This document shows, piece after piece, positions 3,112-56,533 of a DNA stretch of 64,000 bases (the first letter of the stretch is position 1; every line of letters begins with the position of its first letter). The stretch comes from Thecamonas trahens ATCC 50062 (lineage: Eukaryota; Protista; Apusomonadida). The stretch is taken from contig NW_013657618.1 of NCBI RefSeq assembly GCF_000142905.1, forward strand, positions 124,001-188,000, written 5' to 3'. The notes beneath the pieces were generated by a model. The model ran no database searches and was not told the DNA's origin. It was given only the letters and a program-made list of their open reading frames with translations. The position numbers were made by a program, and so were the translations under genes.

Positions 3112-6100
3112 TTATGTCGAGGACGGCGGCTCGCTTGAGGTCGTCGGGACGGGCGTAACGGGCGACGGCGGTGGGGATGTGACAGCGGCGGCAGCAGCGG
3201 CGGCGATGGAGGTCGGCAGAGCGACAGTGCCGCCGGTGACAGTCGGCTTGCGGCTCTTGGACGGCTTGGACGGCGCATTCGCTGTCTTGAGCGATGGACG
3301 TCGGCCGGAGAGCTTGCGAGGTGGCGGAGAGGCTGGTGGCGGACCGGCCGACGCACCGGGCGGAGCGGAGATGAGGACGGGTGACGGCGGCGAGCTGATC
3401 GAGGGCTGGCGGGCGTGAGCAGCGGCGGGGACGTGCGCGGGCGGCTCGGGCAGGGCGACCGGAGCCGGGATGGGCGATTGGGGCGGCGGACTGGAGGCTT
3501 TGACGAGCGCGGCGCGGTGCGGCGGCGGCTCGGGGCCGACGTAAGTCGGCTTGCGGGCCTTGGACGGCTTCTTGGGCGGCTCGCGAAGGATGGTGAGACG
3601 ATCAAGCTTGGCCTTGCGGCGCTGGTCCTGGATGGCAGCCATGCGCTCCTGGCGCTTAGCAAAGAGGCGGGCGACGTTGTTCTCCTCGGAGCGCTCGGTC
3701 TTGTCGAGCTCGACGCGTGCGGCGGCGACGAGGACGCGACGAGCCTCGGTGACGTTGCGGACGCGGTTGAGGATGGCCTTTGTCTTTGCGGCACGTGCCT
3801 TGGCGATCTCCGCCGTGTGGCGCTCCTCCATGGCGGCGAGGACAGACTCAAACTGGGCGCGAAATGCTGTCAGTTCTGCGGCCTGGGCCAGGACAAGGTC
3901 GCGGACGGCGGCGCTGGCGTCGTCAAAGAAGGCAGTGCAGTTGTCGCGGGCGTCGAGGAACTCTGTGAACGACATAAAGACCTCCGGGAGCGCGCGGGTA
4001 GTCTCGCGGGTCCGAGTGTTGAAAAAGTGCATCTCTGCACGGACGTAGTCAGGGATCTCTGCCCAGAAAAGCTCATTGGTCATGGGTGCGGTGGTGTCGC
4101 CGTAACGGAAGGTCGGGCGCGACGGCAGCGGGTCGTCGTCGTCGGCGTACTTGTCAAAGACGGCCCAGTTGATGGCCGACTCCTCGGTCTCGGTCTTGTT
4201 GAGCTTGTCGACGACGGTTGCGTGGAGCGAGGGATTTGCCCGCATGCGCTCGATGTAGGCAGCGACTTCGGCGTGGACCGGCTTCACAAGCTCGAGGGCG
4301 GGGAGGAGCTGGACCTGGCTTTCCTCAAAATGGGTGGGAAAGGCAGGGCCGTAGGCAAACAGGTGGACCGGGTGCTTGTTGACACGCGACGGTTCGGGCG
4401 CGTAGTGTGTGGCGGCGACCTGGAGCGAAGGATCGGAGAGGAAGAGCGCCTTTGCACCACGACCAAGTCGGAGCTTGGACTTGCCCTTCTTCTCGACGAT
4501 GGCCTCGTCAAAGTGCATGCCCGCAAGGTCGACGCCTTGAAAGGCGGCGGTGACCCGCTCCTCGACAAAGAGGTTGAACGCCTGTGTGGCGAGCATGGCC
4601 GAGACAAAGGCCTGGGCCTTGGAGTTCTTGGAGGCGAGCGCGGCGAGCGACTCGAGGAAGCCGTCCTTGTCAAAAAGCGGAAAGTTGTAGTCGTCCATCA
4701 TGGCGGCGTACGCCTCCTCGTCGTCAGCAGTGACGACGTACTTTGCATAGTCCTGGAAGAGCGAGGTGAAGAAGCGGAGGAACGCGTCGCGGGCGGCGTC
4801 GGCGTCGGCGCTCTGCGCCGACTGGCCCTTGAGGCGCAGCGAGTCAAGCTCGGGGTCGTCATTGAGGTCAGGGTCGGGCTCGGCGCTGGAAGGCGCGCCG
4901 GCCGGCGGATGGGAGGAGGCGGCCGAGGTGACGGCGCGGACACGGAGCTCGTCTGATCCGACCGAGATGGATCGAGCAGGCGTGCCGCGGCTCCGGAGAC
5001 GCGAGGCGTGAGTGTCAATGCTCTGCCGGCGACGGTAGGCAGCCATGGAGCGGTCGACAAGGGCCAGCTGCGGCGACGAGTCGTGAATCGAGTCGGAGAG
5101 AAGCTGAATGGTGGGCGTGCCGTTGGTAGACGGCGTGTCACGGGTGGAGGCGATGGAGGAGCGGCGCGAGGAGAGCGGAGACGGGCCGGTCTTGCCACCA
5201 GCCTGGCTCGGCGGCGCACCGACGAGAGTCGGCTCGAGCAGCGAGTTGTCTGCGTCAAGGGTGACCGGGGCGACTGCACGGGCGACATAGTGCGAGTGAA
5301 CCTTGCGGAGCTTGGCAATGTCGAGCGGAGCGCCTGGGCGGCGCATCCTGATGGCAGAGAGGCGCTTGACGAGCTTCTTATGCACGTACTCGGGGAGCGG
5401 CTCGATGTCGAGCGGGGCGCCGGACGAGACGGCACCGGTATCGATGTTGAAGCGGACGACGTCGTCAGAGAGCTCGTTGCGCGGGAGGTACTCGTGGAGC
5501 ATGCCCATGACAAACGGGACCGGGGCATGGACAAAGTTGACGAGCGGCTTGGGGACGAGCGGGATGTACACGTGGTCCCACTTGAAGGGGTAAAGGAGCG
5601 AGAGCAGGGCCTCGGCGATTGGGGTGAGGAGCCAGGCGTGGTCCGAGACGAGGACGAGCTTTTGTTCGAGAACGAGGGCGTGGAAGAGCTGGATGAGGGT
5701 GTCCTGGTCGGCGACCATGAGGAGCAAGTCCATGGCGACATCGAGGAGTGGGAGCTCATTAAAGGCCGGCCTGCGGAGGAAGAGCTCAGACTGGCCGATC
5801 GAGACCGAGACTTGGAGCTTGCCGCGCGGCGGCAGCGGGACTTGTTCGAGCAGGTTGCACAACAGGTCGCGGTAAGGGATGCGGAATGAGACCGGGAGCG
5901 ACTCGGTCGGGGCGGCGACCTCTTCCACGCGGCGGAGATGGATGTCGAGGAGCGAGACGAGGTACGACTCGATAAAGGCGTAGACCGGCGCCTTGCAAAC
6001 GAGGACCAGCGCCTTGGGCACAAGGACCCGGACGCGAATGCGGACGGCGTCGGGCCGCGGATCGGCGGCCGGCGGCGCGACCGACTCCAGCTCGTCGTCG

Positions 6101-54015: not shown

Positions 54016-56136
54016 TCACATGGCGTTGCCGGCGCCGTCGCGGCCGGCCTTGGAGGTTACCATGACGCGGATGGCGCCTTCTGCGACGAGGGCGATGGCA
54101 GCCGAGTTGTGGCCACCGGCGTAGTGGGAAGAGGAGAAGATGGTGATGACCTGGGCAGACTTGGCGTAGGAGACGCCAAGGCTCGGGGCTTGGTGGGCGC
54201 GGATGATGTGCGAGCAGCCCGAGGTGGCGAGGAAGGCGGCGACGGCGTCGTGACCAAAGACGGCGGTGCCGCCACCGCGATCGCTGGGCGCAAAGCCGTG
54301 CGGAAAGCCCGGGGCGGGCGCAGCGGCGAGCTCGGTCTCATCTTCGGCCGGGTCGGACCAGAGGAGGTCCATTGCGGCAACAAGGCCCGCAGCGGGCGCG
54401 TCGGCCGGAGAGTCGGCTGTCAGTTCGGCGGCGACGGTGTCGTCCATGATGGAGGCGATGGCATCGGCGGAGAGCGGGCGCGGGAGGGCGGCGATGGCAG
54501 CGAGCGGGTCGTCACCGCAGGTCCGCGGAATGCCGCCGTGGACAGCAAAGATGCGCGAGTTGATGACAGCGGCGAGCGGCATGGTCTCGCATACCGAGTT
54601 GAGCTCGGTCCAGAGAGCCTCGCCGCGCGACTCGGAGCCGAGAAGCTCGTGGCACTGGGCACGGAACGATCCGTCTTCGTAGACTTCGATGTCACCGTTG
54701 ATGTCAGCGAGCTCGTGGTTGCCACGGAGGGCCACCACGTGCTGCGGATACGCGGTGGCGAGGGCGAGGACAAAGGCAAGGGTCTCGACCGAGTGCGGGC
54801 CGCGGTCAACGTAGTCGCCGAGAAACAGGATCTTGGCCGGGCACATGGGGACGCCGGCGCCCCAAAAGGTTCGTGCGAAAAAGGCAAGGTCCGAGTAGTT
54901 GCCGTGCAAGTCGCCGAGGACGTAGACCGGGTCCGGGAGCGAGACGAGCGACGGATGGGTGAGCATGGTGGCGCGCGCGCCGGGGACGAGACGGCGGAGC
55001 ATGAGGATAAAGGCCTCGCGTTCGCCGTCGGAGCGCCAGCCGTGCGACGGCTCGTCCCAGGCACCGCCGGTGCCACCGCCGTCGGCAAGCGGGAGAAAGG
55101 CGTCACCGAGGAGCGAGAGCACAGCCTCAGCCACCTCCTTGGCTGCGCTCAGCGCGTCGGGCTGGGCGCCGAGCGCCGATGAGGCAAACACTTCTTGTGT
55201 TGAGTGGGTAAAGTTGCGCGTGGGGAGGGTCCGGCGCTCACGGACCATGCCCGATGCCTCGAGCACATGGTAAGTTGGCGAGACCGAGTACTCGGCGGAC
55301 GGGGCCGGGGCCGACTCAGCAGGCTCAGCAGGCTCGGACGCGGGCGGTGCAGGCTGCAGCGCCGGCAACGGCGACGACGCCATGAGCGCGTAGATGGCAA
55401 GCGTGTAGACGGTGAGGCCGGCGGTAGCGCCAAGCGCCATGGTGGGAGGATCAAGAGCATCGGTGACGTGACAGATGGCCAGCCAGGCGCCGAGCGCGCC
55501 GGCCACCGTCAGTGAGACCGTCAGCGGCAGCAAGGCTTTGACTGGTCGCACCGATGAAGCTAGCCGGTCCGGACCCAGGTGATGTTGACCTGCCTCTCCC
55601 GTCACCGCCGCATCGGACTTGCTCTGCTGCATCCGAACCGGCGAGTCGGCGATGGAGAGCTCGGACATGCGCATGGCCTCGAACGAGTGGCCCTCAAACG
55701 AGACCGATGCCTCTCGCAGGACGCTGTCATTGGGTGAGAGCGAGGTGGTGGTGTCGGTGGGGAGTGGCAGAGGTGGAGGCGATGAGGGAGATGATGACAG
55801 AGAAGAGCTCTCGGTAGAGCATGAGCTCTCGATCGACTCGTCGAGTGATGACAAGATTGGTTTGGTGGTTGTGGTTGTGGTTGTGGCGGCGGCTTCAGCT
55901 TCAGCTTCAGTGACTGCGTCATGGACAATGTCGATGAGGGTGGCCTTGCGGGCTTTGGAGGGGAAGGTGATCTGGGTGCGGGAGGAAGGAGGGGCGGTGA
56001 GCGGGGTTGAGCGGGGGGGGGGGGGGGGGGGGAGGGGGGAATGGGAGAGGGTGCGTACATGGTGCTTCTTCAACCATGTCTTCAGCTGCTTCACTGTGTG
56101 CTGCTCTGGTGCTCGTGCCACAGCTGTCTGCTCCAT
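54016..56136 (-). CDS. PPP-family Ser/Thr phosphatase with N-terminal HeH/LEM-like domain and two transmembrane helices; exons 56136-56059 and 55971-54016
   Basis: PPP motifs GDLHG, GDYVDRG, LRGNHE, HGG, DLLWSDP, IIRAHQ and ITIFSS. The spliced N-terminus reads TVKQLKTWLKKHHITFPSKARKATLIDIV. Two hydrophobic helices lie at ~55530-55380. Confidence 0.85.
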   Translation of the reverse strand: MEQTAVARAPEQHTVKQLKTWLKKHHVRTLSHSPLPPPPPPRSTPLTAPPSSRTQITFPSKARKATLIDIVHDAVTEAEAEAAATTTTTTTKPILSSLDESIESSCSTESSSLSSSPSSPPPLPLPTDTTTSLSPNDSVLREASVSFEGHSFEAMRMSELSIADSPVRMQQSKSDAAVTGEAGQHHLGPDRLASSVRPVKALLPLTVSLTVAGALGAWLAICHVTDALDPPTMALGATAGLTVYTLAIYALMASSPLPALQPAPPASEPAEPAESAPAPSAEYSVSPTYHVLEASGMVRERRTLPTRNFTHSTQEVFASSALGAQPDALSAAKEVAEAVLSLLGDAFLPLADGGGTGGAWDEPSHGWRSDGEREAFILMLRRLVPGARATMLTHPSLVSLPDPVYVLGDLHGNYSDLAFFARTFWGAGVPMCPAKILFLGDYVDRGPHSVETLAFVLALATAYPQHVVALRGNHELADINGDIEVYEDGSFRAQCHELLGSESRGEALWTELNSVCETMPLAAVINSRIFAVHGGIPRTCGDDPLAAIAALPRPLSADAIASIMDDTVAAELTADSPADAPAAGLVAAMDLLWSDPAEDETELAAAPAPGFPHGFAPSDRGGGTAVFGHDAVAAFLATSGCSHIIRAHQAPSLGVSYAKSAQVITIFSSSHYAGGHNSAAIALVAEGAIRVMVTSKAGRDGAGNAM

Positions 56137-56533
56137 GCCGGTGGCCAGTGGCTTTTGGCGCCAAAAGTTCGCGCGACGAGTGTCTGTCCGGAATGGTGAT
56201 TCGGACAATGGCGTGACCTGGGACAGCTCATGCCCGACTCGGCAACCGGTGGGCAGGCTTGGTTGGGTGTGGTCATGACGGCTGATGTGCCTGGATCTGC
56301 GCGGTGGCGTGCAGGTGATCGTCGACATGATGCCGGGGATGTTCGGGCTCATAGTGTACAGCTCGGCCCAGAAAGGGACCGGACTCGGATCGGCCTGCGC
56401 ATGACCCGCGCCTCGTCTGCGCCTCGTCTGGACATGTACAGAAGTGGCCTGACAGGGGGAGGACGGTGGGTGGGCGGCGGTGGTGGCGGTGGCGGCGGGC
56501 GGGCGGCAGGCGGGCGGCAGGCGGCGGGCGCTA

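What the first reader, a model, noticed from the sequence alone, without database searches (positions are those of the whole stretch)
54016..56136. LEM/HeH domain + two TM helices + PPP phosphatase: a possible self-contained inner-nuclear-membrane phosphatase
Seen: removing an 87-nt in-frame intron (CAT|gtacgc...cag|ATC, 56058-55972) gives TVKQLKTWLKKHHITFPSKARKATLIDIV. A Ser/Thr-rich linker, two close hydrophobic helices and a complete PPP catalytic domain follow. Established: this N-terminal pattern resembles the HeH/LEM helix-extension-helix of Src1/Heh1/Man1, whose architecture is HeH-linker-TM-TM-nucleoplasmic domain. Animal LEM proteins recruit phosphatases in trans (ANKLE2-PP2A, MAN1-PPM1A). 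Inference: here the phosphatase is fused in cis, on the same membrane side as the chromatin-binding domain. I do not know of a described protein with this architecture. The intron hides the domain from the raw ORF.
Basis: partly seen in the sequence, partly recalled or inferred. Interest (0 to 1): 0.8.

Follow-up and report, generated by a model that had tools for sequence, protein, structure and literature searches.

The report
Membrane-anchored phosphatase with DNA-tether motif
A protist gene joins a small chromatin-binding-type motif, a two-helix membrane anchor and a complete Ser/Thr phosphatase in one protein. This looks like a phosphatase built into the inner nuclear membrane, a job that animals do with separate proteins, but where it sits in the cell is untested.

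Summary
On the minus strand, 54016-56136, an 87-nt intron (56058-55972, GTACGC...CAG) splits an N-terminal helix-extension-helix (HeH/SAP-type) motif. Next come a disordered Ser/Thr/acidic linker of about 130 residues, two hydrophobic helices 8 residues apart, and a complete PPP phosphatase.

The intron is backed by comparison:
- A 51%-identical relative on a marine metagenome contig has an intron at the same codon boundary. It is 92 nt long and shifts the frame, so it must be spliced out.
- A second gene in the same genome carries the same split HeH cassette (191-nt intron with a stop), fused to a PI-synthase-like enzyme.
- Intact HeH domains of this genome align to the unspliced ORF with one gap of exactly 29 residues.

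Limits:
- Neither exon alone reaches Pfam's HeH threshold.
- Pfam's HeH model also scores a Ku70 SAP domain above threshold, so the call holds only at superfamily level.
- True LEM is not supported.
- The joined protein was never searched or folded.
- Inner-nuclear-membrane location and DNA binding are inference.

A profile search of 1.84 billion proteins found the N-terminal half only in this gene and one metagenome lineage. The scan noted this same stretch twice, not on other DNA.

Verdict: a new domain architecture built from known parts.

The parts
56059..56136 (-). Exon 1 (26 codons): start Met plus helix 1 of the HeH motif (residues 14-26, nt 56059-56097)
   Evidence: Sequence. The exon-1 peptide is conserved in L001 and L009. 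hhalign aligns it to intact HeH columns 2-17, prob 82%, E 1e-5. Codon score is best in frame 0.
55972..56058 (-). Intron, 87 nt, phase 0, GTACGC...CAG, C-rich, in frame and free of stops
   Evidence: Introns sit at the same position in L001 (92 nt, frame-shifting) and L009 (191 nt with a stop). MAFFT opens a 29-column gap exactly here. Codon score is poor in all frames.
55924..55971 (-). Start of exon 2: extended loop and helix 2 of the HeH motif (ITFPSKARKATLIDIV)
   Evidence: Pfam HeH profile 17-33, 21.8 bits. Genome search gives 21.7 bits. hhalign aligns it to intact HeH columns 18-33, prob 95%, E 2.7e-8.
55537..55923 (-). Disordered Ser/Thr/Ala/Glu-rich linker, about 129 residues, net acidic (8 K+R, 18 D+E), no basic NLS-like cluster
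   Evidence: Composition. AF2 pLDDT is below 50 for exon-2 residues 31-149. It aligns poorly with L001.
55465..55536 (-). Hydrophobic helix 1 (exon-2 residues about 146-169)
   Evidence: Kyte-Doolittle peak 1.77. AF2 helix 147-172. The counterpart in L001 peaks at 2.01.
55441..55464 (-). Short loop between the helices (8 residues here, about 14 in L001)
55372..55440 (-). Hydrophobic helix 2 (exon-2 residues about 178-200); borderline hydrophobicity
   Evidence: Kyte-Doolittle peak 1.54. AF2 helix 175-198. The counterpart in L001 peaks at 2.09.
54952..55287 (-). Structured pre-catalytic region shared with an unnamed PPP clade (motif WDEPSHxW)
   Evidence: Conserved with P0002-P0030. AF2 pLDDT 79-97.
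54052..54951 (-). PPP-family Ser/Thr phosphatase catalytic domain with GDLHG, GDYVDRG, GNHE, HGG, RG, RAHQ and SSSHY motifs
   Evidence: Pfam Metallophos E 2.8e-25. Best PDB matches are BSU1 at 5e-38 and PP1 at about 1e-31. Invariant catalytic columns. AF2 pLDDT above 90. Foldseek to PP1 gives TM 0.86-0.88.
54016..54051 (-). C-terminal tail and TGA stop

Best explanation
This is one two-exon gene encoding a 677-residue membrane protein. In order it has an N-terminal HeH/SAP-type helix-extension-helix motif, a disordered acidic Ser/Thr-rich linker of about 130 residues, a tight hairpin of two hydrophobic helices, and a 451-residue (47 kDa) C-terminal part. That C-terminal part is a structured pre-catalytic region plus a complete, presumably active PPP-family Ser/Thr phosphatase. 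The loop between the helices is only 8-14 residues and there is no signal peptide, so both ends must lie on the same, non-lumenal side of the membrane. The most likely working model, by analogy with Src1/Heh1/Heh2/Lem2/MAN1, is as follows. The protein inserts in the ER. It reaches the inner nuclear membrane by diffusion, since both extralumenal parts are under about 60 kDa. There the HeH motif binds DNA or chromatin and holds it, which places a dedicated phosphatase at the membrane-chromatin interface. Shown: gene structure, domain content, catalytic residues, and conservation in a second lineage. Inferred: splicing in vivo, topology, DNA binding, nuclear-rim location, and substrates.
For: Gene model. 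The relative L001/P0002 (51% identical) has its ATG, a conserved exon-1 peptide, a GTACGC donor at the same codon boundary and a 92-nt intron. That intron shifts the frame, and a TAG closes the exon-2 frame right at the acceptor, so splicing is obligatory there. A paralogous cassette in the same genome (L009) has a 191-nt intron with an in-frame stop at the same boundary. MAFFT of five intact HeH domains from this genome against the unspliced ORF opens a single 29-column gap that equals the intron. Codon scores favour frame 0 in exon 1 but not in the intron or upstream.

HeH motif. Pfam finds a half-hit at E 1.5e-4. hhalign places exon 1 on template columns 2-17 and exon 2 on columns 18-33, so the halves abut exactly. 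Exon 1 of the paralogue hits Pfam HeH positions 1-17. A profile search of the PDB finds SAP/HeH-type domains.

Anchor. Both hydrophobic helices are conserved in both lineages and AF2 models them as helices.

Phosphatase. all agree. HeH half, linker, helices and phosphatase lie in one uninterrupted frame in both species.

Precedent. LEM-family envelope proteins pair with phosphatases in trans: Ankle2-PP2A (PMC11835388) and MAN1-CTDNEP1/NEP1R1 (PMC11992160).
Against: Neither exon alone reaches Pfam's HeH cut-off (21.8 versus 28.9 bits). Exon 1 alone gives no Pfam hit, and the HeH half of L001 is not recognised by Pfam at all. The joined domain was not scored. Pfam's HeH model also scores a Ku70 SAP domain above its cut-off, so the motif does not by itself imply nuclear-envelope function. 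Helix 2 is only borderline hydrophobic in this species (1.54), so a monotopic hairpin is possible. The linker has no basic NLS of the Heh1/Heh2 type. There is no MSC domain. No expression, localisation or activity data exist. AF2 on the unspliced N-terminus was uninformative (pLDDT 64).
Confidence: 0.6

Rival explanations
1. The architecture is real, but the protein is a general ER or other endomembrane-anchored PPP phosphatase. Its SAP/HeH-type N-terminus would then have a non-envelope role, such as protein or RNA binding, or chromatin capture only during mitosis, rather than making it a resident inner-nuclear-membrane enzyme.
For: The motif is assignable only to the HeH/SAP superfamily. The linker has no NLS-like basic cluster. 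There is no MSC domain. The tandem-HeH protein on contig C23 of the same genome has no hydrophobic segment at the threshold used, so an HeH hit does not imply the envelope.
Against: An N-terminal HeH followed by a long unfolded linker and two membrane helices is the layout of Src1/Heh1/Heh2/Lem2/MAN1. Both extralumenal parts are small enough to pass the pore membrane. A DNA-binding-type motif on a membrane protein has little use away from chromatin.
Confidence: 0.25
2. The 87-nt segment is retained, always or in a regulated isoform. This would give a full-length protein whose HeH motif is interrupted by a 29-residue Pro-rich insert.
For: The intron is in frame and free of stops, so retention would not truncate the protein. 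AF2 still models both flanking helices.
Against: The homologous introns are 92 and 191 nt, frame-breaking or stop-containing. The insert is not conserved and has a poor codon score in every frame. In DNA this GC-rich, an in-frame stop-free 87-nt stretch is not unlikely by chance (my rough estimate, about 1 in 4).
Confidence: 0.05
3. The gene model is wrong. The phosphatase would be translated from an internal start, as in the automatic 474-residue call P0001 that begins inside helix 2, and the upstream HeH-like coding is not part of it.
For: The collection's own gene call for this contig starts at the Met of helix 2.
Against: That call comes from a caller blind to introns. HeH helix 2, both hydrophobic helices and the pre-catalytic region upstream of that Met are conserved with L001 in one open frame. 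Exon 1, with its ATG, is conserved at the same distance.
Confidence: 0.05
4. The resemblance to HeH is a chance match of two short amphipathic helices.
For: Each half is only 13-16 residues, and the Pfam score is below threshold.
Against: The two halves map independently to adjoining halves of the template. The same pattern with the same intron occurs in a paralogue whose halves both hit Pfam HeH. It is conserved at 51% overall identity in L001 while the adjacent linker is not.
Confidence: 0.03

Closest known systems
Src1/Heh1, Heh2, Lem2, MAN1 (HeH/LEM-MSC inner nuclear membrane proteins)
   Same: N-terminal helix-extension-helix motif, a long unfolded linker, two membrane helices, and both ends on the nucleoplasmic side.
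   Different: The C-terminal MSC/winged-helix domain is replaced by a PPP phosphatase. The lumenal loop is only 8-14 residues instead of a sizeable lumenal segment. There is no basic NLS in the linker. The genome's single MSC gene lies elsewhere (contig C10), and no HeH hit was found on that contig or seen in the ORFs of the 1.5 kb held upstream.
Ankle2/LEM4-PP2A and MAN1-CTDNEP1/NEP1R1 (also MAN1-PPM1A) complexes of animals
   Same: A LEM-family envelope membrane protein brings a protein phosphatase to the chromatin-membrane interface (PMC11835388, PMC11992160).
   Different: In those systems the phosphatase is a separate polypeptide recruited in trans, and it is of another kind (PP2A holoenzyme, HAD-type CTDNEP1, PPM1A). 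Here a PPP catalytic domain is fused in cis.
CTDNEP1/Nem1-Spo7 nuclear envelope phosphatase
   Same: A membrane-anchored phosphatase of the nuclear envelope and ER.
   Different: It has an unrelated HAD/FCP fold, no DNA-binding-type motif, and its main known substrate is lipin.
Unnamed PPP clade with an FSSSHYCGG motif (e.g. Monosiga brevicollis MONBRDRAFT_34386, Pelomyxa, arthropod EF-hand forms, protist Kelch forms), near PPKL/BSU1
   Same: The catalytic domain and pre-catalytic region are 35-45% identical. The window gene sits inside this clade (SH-aLRT 99). BSU1 is the best solved match.
   Different: None of the 112 relatives carries HeH, going by the Pfam lists precomputed for them. None of the 17 read in full apart from P0002 shows the two hydrophobic helices. 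Their accessory domains are Kelch, EF-hand or basic N-termini.
HeH-PI-synthase-like gene of the same genome (G000:C50, L009)
   Same: The same N-terminal HeH cassette, split by an intron at the same codon boundary, followed by a linker and a membrane enzyme.
   Different: Its linker is Lys-rich and NLS-like, and its enzyme is a multi-pass CDP-alcohol phosphatidyltransferase rather than a phosphatase.

Membership tests
HeH/LEM-like domain (Pfam PF12949; HeH/SAP/LEM superfamily) | About 35-residue helix-extended loop-helix matching the family profile above its curated cut-off | tested here: inconclusive
   Exon 2 alone scores 21.8 bits against a 28.9-bit cut-off. Exon 1 alone gives no hit. hhalign maps the exons to columns 2-17 and 18-33 of intact HeH domains. 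The joined domain was not scored.
HeH/LEM-like domain (Pfam PF12949; HeH/SAP/LEM superfamily) | Distinguishable from SAP domains | tested here: not met
   Pfam's HeH model scores this genome's Ku70 C-terminal SAP domain at 30.5 bits. The PDB profile search returns SAP-type domains. Only superfamily membership can be claimed.
LEM domain proper (Pfam PF03020) | Match to the LEM profile; BAF-binding motif | tested here: not met
   There is no LEM hit at E up to 10 in the ORF and none in the whole genome. LEM proper is reported as Holozoa-specific (PMC5630835).
MAN1/Src1/Lem2 family | C-terminal MSC (Man1-Src1p C-terminal) domain | tested here: not met
   There is no PF09402 hit in the protein. 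The only MSC gene of the genome is on contig C10.
MAN1/Src1/Lem2 family | N-terminal HeH, linker and two membrane helices, with both ends on one side | tested here: met
   Topology is inferred from the 8-14-residue loop.
MAN1/Src1/Lem2 family | Inner nuclear membrane localisation and DNA/chromatin binding | not testable with these tools
   This needs tagging and microscopy, plus EMSA.
PPP-family Ser/Thr phosphatases | GDxHG, GDxVDRG, GNHE, HGG, RG, catalytic His (RAHQ) and a SAPNY-like motif; PP1-like fold | tested here: met
   Pfam Metallophos E 2.8e-25. The motifs are seen and are invariant columns. AF2 core pLDDT is above 90. Foldseek to PP1 gives TM 0.86-0.88.
PPKL/BSU1 phosphatases | N-terminal Kelch propeller; placement within the PPKL/BSL clade | tested here: not met
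   There is no Kelch hit. The tree places the gene in a separate 39-row clade (SH-aLRT 99), apart from BSL/PPKL.
PP1 | Placement within the PP1 clade; STPPase_N domain | tested here: not met
   It falls outside the PP1 clade and has no PF16891 hit.

The most novel reading that the evidence does not exclude
In this lineage the intron-split HeH exon pair acts as a portable cassette that retains membrane enzymes at the inner nuclear membrane. It has been attached to at least two of them, a PPP phosphatase and a PI-synthase-like enzyme. The inner nuclear membrane would then have its own hard-wired protein phosphatase and phospholipid synthesis. The phosphatase fusion would be a natural 'Rosetta stone' for the LEM-protein/phosphatase partnerships that animals build from separate proteins.
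Probability: 0.35. Interest if true: 0.75.

Novelty: new variant of a known kind. Interest (0 to 1): 0.6.

Why it matters
LEM/HeH proteins and phosphatases cooperate at the animal nuclear envelope, but as separate proteins (Ankle2-PP2A for post-mitotic reassembly, MAN1-CTDNEP1 for SMAD shut-off). A natural single-chain version would be independent evolutionary evidence that placing a phosphatase at the membrane-chromatin interface is a selected function. It would also be a compact tool: one gene to express, localise and assay. An earlier scan note, not verified here, names the genome as the apusomonad Thecamonas trahens, a sister lineage of animals plus fungi. If that holds, the gene also bears on how the opisthokont envelope toolkit was assembled. 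The paralogous HeH-PI-synthase fusion suggests a general way of targeting enzymes to the inner nuclear membrane by exon-cassette transfer.

Tried and rejected
1. Joined (spliced) protein. All evidence is exon by exon by reference, so the Pfam score of the complete HeH domain is unknown.
2. AF2 of the unspliced 80-residue N-terminus with a 6-row alignment. Mean pLDDT was 64, with helices 15-24 and 60-79 and the intron-encoded part as coil. It says nothing about helix packing.
3. Pfam on exon 1 alone and on L001 exon 1 and exon 2. No HeH hit.
4. JGI metagenome scan with the two-sequence alignment. 159 pattern matches, none confirmed as a relative.
5. ESM Atlas. Only generic PPP clusters, all below 0.9, none with HeH.
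6. Profile search of 1.84 billion representatives with the N-terminal 340 residues. It found only self, P0002 and P0113, a frameshifted near-copy of P0002.
7. GTACGC donor motif. It is only mildly enriched in the window (33 against 20.8 expected, 2 of 100 shuffles reach it), so it is not usable as proof.
8. One of 14 FA_hydroxylase loci was inspected (C65) and showed no HeH in the ORFs listed.
9. Organism identity. It could not be checked, because the names of the window's own proteins are masked.
10. PPKL/BSU1 or PP1 membership. Rejected on the tree.
Full report
WHAT IS IN THE SEQUENCE. The window is GC-rich (about 65%) eukaryotic DNA. It comes from a 28.7-Mb, 131-contig assembly and corresponds to contig C62:124001-188000. 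On the minus strand an ATG at 56136 opens a frame that runs to TGA at 54018-54016. That segment starts with GTACGC at 56058 and ends with CAG at 55972. It is 87 nt long, C-rich, and has a CTCAC branch-like site about 25 nt before the AG.

IS THE INTRON REAL? No transcript data are available, but four independent lines say yes.

(a) The nearest relative is P0002, 51% identical, on a 6.7-kb Tara Oceans contig (L001). The DNA upstream of that truncated call holds an ATG at 4484 and a 25-codon exon whose peptide (..HTVKEIKAWLEAHN) matches exon 1 of the window. A GTACGC donor sits at the same codon boundary, followed by a 92-nt intron ending in TAG, and then VEYNKKARKAVLVSLV.. runs straight into P0002. 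Because 92 is not a multiple of 3 and a TAG closes the exon-2 frame right at the acceptor, the two conserved coding pieces can be joined only by splicing.

(b) A whole-genome scan with Pfam HeH found a second gene, on contig C50 (L009), in which profile positions 1-18 and 16-33 lie on two pieces 183 nt apart. Reading the DNA shows exon 1 (..KVVELREVLKKNG), GTACGT, a 191-nt intron with an in-frame TAA, ACAG, and then ISAPSRARKAEYIEIL... That is the same cassette with the same phase-0 intron.

(c) MAFFT of five uninterrupted HeH/SAP-type domains from this genome against the unspliced N-terminus opens one gap of exactly 29 columns. That gap coincides with the 87 nt.

(d) A codon-usage log-odds score, trained on the neighbouring 2,310-codon ORF, prefers frame 0 in exon 1 (-0.05 against -1.33 and -0.53). 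This is similar to the first 150 codons of exon 2. The score is poor and frame-indifferent in the intron (-0.88, -1.55, -1.18) and in the upstream 225 nt.

The start codon is also conserved: the Met lies 12-13 residues before the TVK of helix 1 in both the window and L001.

IS IT AN HeH DOMAIN? Everything here is exon by exon.
- Pfam on the unspliced ORF reports HeH positions 17-33 of 35 at 21.8 bits (E 1.5e-4), below the 28.9-bit cut-off. Exon 1 alone gives nothing.
- Exon 1 of the C50 paralogue does hit HeH positions 1-17 (14.7 bits).
- Profile-profile comparison places the three exon-1 peptides on columns 2-17 of an alignment of intact HeH domains (prob 82%, E 1e-5). It places the three exon-2 starts on columns 18-33 (prob 95%, E 2.7e-8). 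The halves therefore abut precisely.
- A profile of all these pieces finds SAP/HeH-type domains in the PDB: FluMu gp35 C-terminus at 4e-8, SIZ1 SAP, and the CDNF SAP-like domain.

Two cautions apply. First, Pfam's HeH model scores this genome's Ku70 C-terminal SAP domain at 30.5 bits, so a hit places a motif in the HeH/SAP superfamily and no finer. Second, the true LEM profile hits neither this protein nor anything in the genome. That agrees with the report that LEM proper is Holozoa-specific while LEM-like/HeH is ancient (PMC5630835).

THE REST OF THE PROTEIN (exon-2 numbering).
- Residues 17-145 are Ser/Thr/Ala/Glu-rich and net acidic, and AF2 models them as disordered.
- Two hydrophobic helices follow, at about 146-169 and 178-200. 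Their Kyte-Doolittle peaks are 1.77 and 1.54, so the second is borderline. The L001 counterparts are clearly hydrophobic (2.01 and 2.09). The loop is 8 residues here and about 14 there.
- AF2 models both as helices (147-172 and 175-198, pLDDT 57-70).
- With so short a loop and no signal peptide, the N- and C-terminal parts must face the same, non-lumenal side, whether the hairpin spans the bilayer or dips into it.
- Residues 229-340 form a structured region (pLDDT 79-97) shared with a wider phosphatase clade.
- Residues 341-640 are a PPP catalytic domain. The evidence is Pfam Metallophos at 2.8e-25 and best solved relatives BSU1 (5e-38) and PP1 (about 1e-31). All metal-binding and catalytic residues are invariant in a 48-sequence alignment. 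AF2 pLDDT is above 90, and Foldseek TM-scores to PP1 structures are 0.86-0.88.
- The C-terminal extralumenal part is 451 residues, 46.7 kDa.

WHICH PHOSPHATASE? A maximum-likelihood tree of 59 sequences pairs the window gene with P0002 (SH-aLRT 100). The pair sits inside a well-supported clade of 39 rows (SH-aLRT 99) that is separate from PPKL/BSL, PP1 and calcineurin. That clade has an FSSSHYCGG motif in place of SAPNYC. It is found in choanoflagellates (Monosiga), Pelomyxa, arthropods and many unnamed protist sequences, with varied accessory parts such as Kelch, EF-hand or basic N-termini. The Pfam lists precomputed for the 112 relatives show no HeH. None of the 17 relatives read in full apart from P0002 shows the two hydrophobic helices.

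HOW WIDESPREAD IS THE ARCHITECTURE? The N-terminal 340 residues were made into a profile with L001 and scored against 1.84 billion representative proteins. Only the gene itself, P0002, and P0113 (a frameshifted near-copy of P0002) matched. A JGI metagenome scan and the ESM Atlas added nothing. Within the genome, only the window gene and the C50 gene carry this split cassette. Full-text searches found no paper describing an HeH- or LEM-phosphatase fusion. So the architecture is known from two lineages only.

HOW IT PROBABLY WORKS. HeH, then unfolded linker, then two membrane helices, with both ends on one side, is the layout of Src1/Heh1/Heh2/Lem2/MAN1. Here the MSC/winged-helix domain is replaced by an enzyme. 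From general knowledge, inner-nuclear-membrane proteins with extralumenal parts under roughly 60 kDa can reach the inner membrane by diffusion and are retained by binding nuclear components. Both parts of this protein qualify. I therefore favour a chromatin- or DNA-tethered inner-membrane PPP phosphatase acting on substrates at the membrane-chromatin interface (confidence 0.6). The architecture itself I hold at about 0.9. Animals achieve the same placement in trans with Ankle2-PP2A (PMC11835388) and MAN1-CTDNEP1/NEP1R1 (PMC11992160). The main rival (0.25) is a general ER or endomembrane phosphatase whose SAP-type N-terminus does something else. It is supported by the lack of an NLS-like cluster and by the fact that the motif cannot be separated from SAP.

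CONTEXT.
- The genome's only MSC gene is on contig C10. No HeH hit was found on that contig or seen in the ORFs of the 1.5 kb held upstream.
- The C50 paralogue fuses the same cassette, through a Lys-rich linker, to a CDP-alcohol phosphatidyltransferase that looks like PI synthase.
- Together these suggest that in this lineage the HeH cassette was moved, intron included, onto membrane enzymes.
- An earlier follow-up note of this scan (s1-746494) names the genome Thecamonas trahens. I could not verify this.
- The scan had noted this same stretch twice (s1-756551, s1-751745), not on other DNA.

VERDICT. It is a new variant of known kinds, namely a new domain architecture built from known modules. 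Interest 0.6.

Noticed in passing
G000:C50, locus L009:1229-2559 (+): A second gene with the same HeH cassette, split by a phase-0 intron at the same codon boundary. Exon 1 is 1229-1315 and the 191-nt intron is 1316-1506 (GTACGT..ACAG, with an in-frame TAA). A Lys-rich NLS-like linker and a CDP-alcohol phosphatidyltransferase (PI-synthase-like) multi-pass enzyme follow.
   Followed up: yes
window 56154-56165: A perfect palindromic E2F-type site, TTTGGCGCCAAA, lies 18 nt upstream of the ATG. It is unique in the window and none of 100 shuffles produces it. This hints at cell-cycle-regulated transcription. No such site was seen upstream of the L001 orthologue.
   Followed up: partly
G000:C17:252295-252417 (+), locus L024:1549-1710: A sub-threshold match to the BAF family (PF02961 positions 24-65, 21.5 bits). 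The peptide ..LLGQYLALADEDAFVQW.. resembles the BAF core and may be one exon of a BAF-like gene. The genome has no LEM-profile hit.
   Followed up: partly
G000:C26, locus L003:1-1614 (+): The C-terminal SAP domain of a Ku70-like protein scores 30.5 bits on Pfam's HeH model, above that model's 28.9-bit cut-off. HeH hits therefore cannot be read as envelope-specific.
   Followed up: yes
G000:C23, locus L002:1234-2904 (+): A 557-codon open frame has two tandem N-terminal HeH-type motifs (51.9 bits together) and no hydrophobic segment at the threshold used, so it is a soluble HeH protein. Its first motif (TVKQLREALKERG..) is the closest intact match to exon 1 of the window gene.
   Followed up: partly
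G000:C10:378217-379080 (-), locus L010: This is the only MSC (Man1/Src1 C-terminal) domain gene of the genome. No HeH hit fell on contig C10 in the genome-wide scan. None is evident in the ORFs of at least 150 codons within the 1.5 kb held upstream. The canonical MSC protein may lack HeH, or may carry it on a distant exon.
   Followed up: partly
window 54019-55440 (-), protein P0001: The public collection's automatic gene call for this locus is a 474-residue protein starting at the Met inside hydrophobic helix 2. It misses exon 1, the HeH motif, the linker and helix 1.
   Followed up: yes
protein P0113 (101 aa): A second metagenome fragment is nearly identical to the N-terminus of P0002 but frameshifted after about 75 residues. 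It is probably the same population or an assembly error.
   Followed up: no
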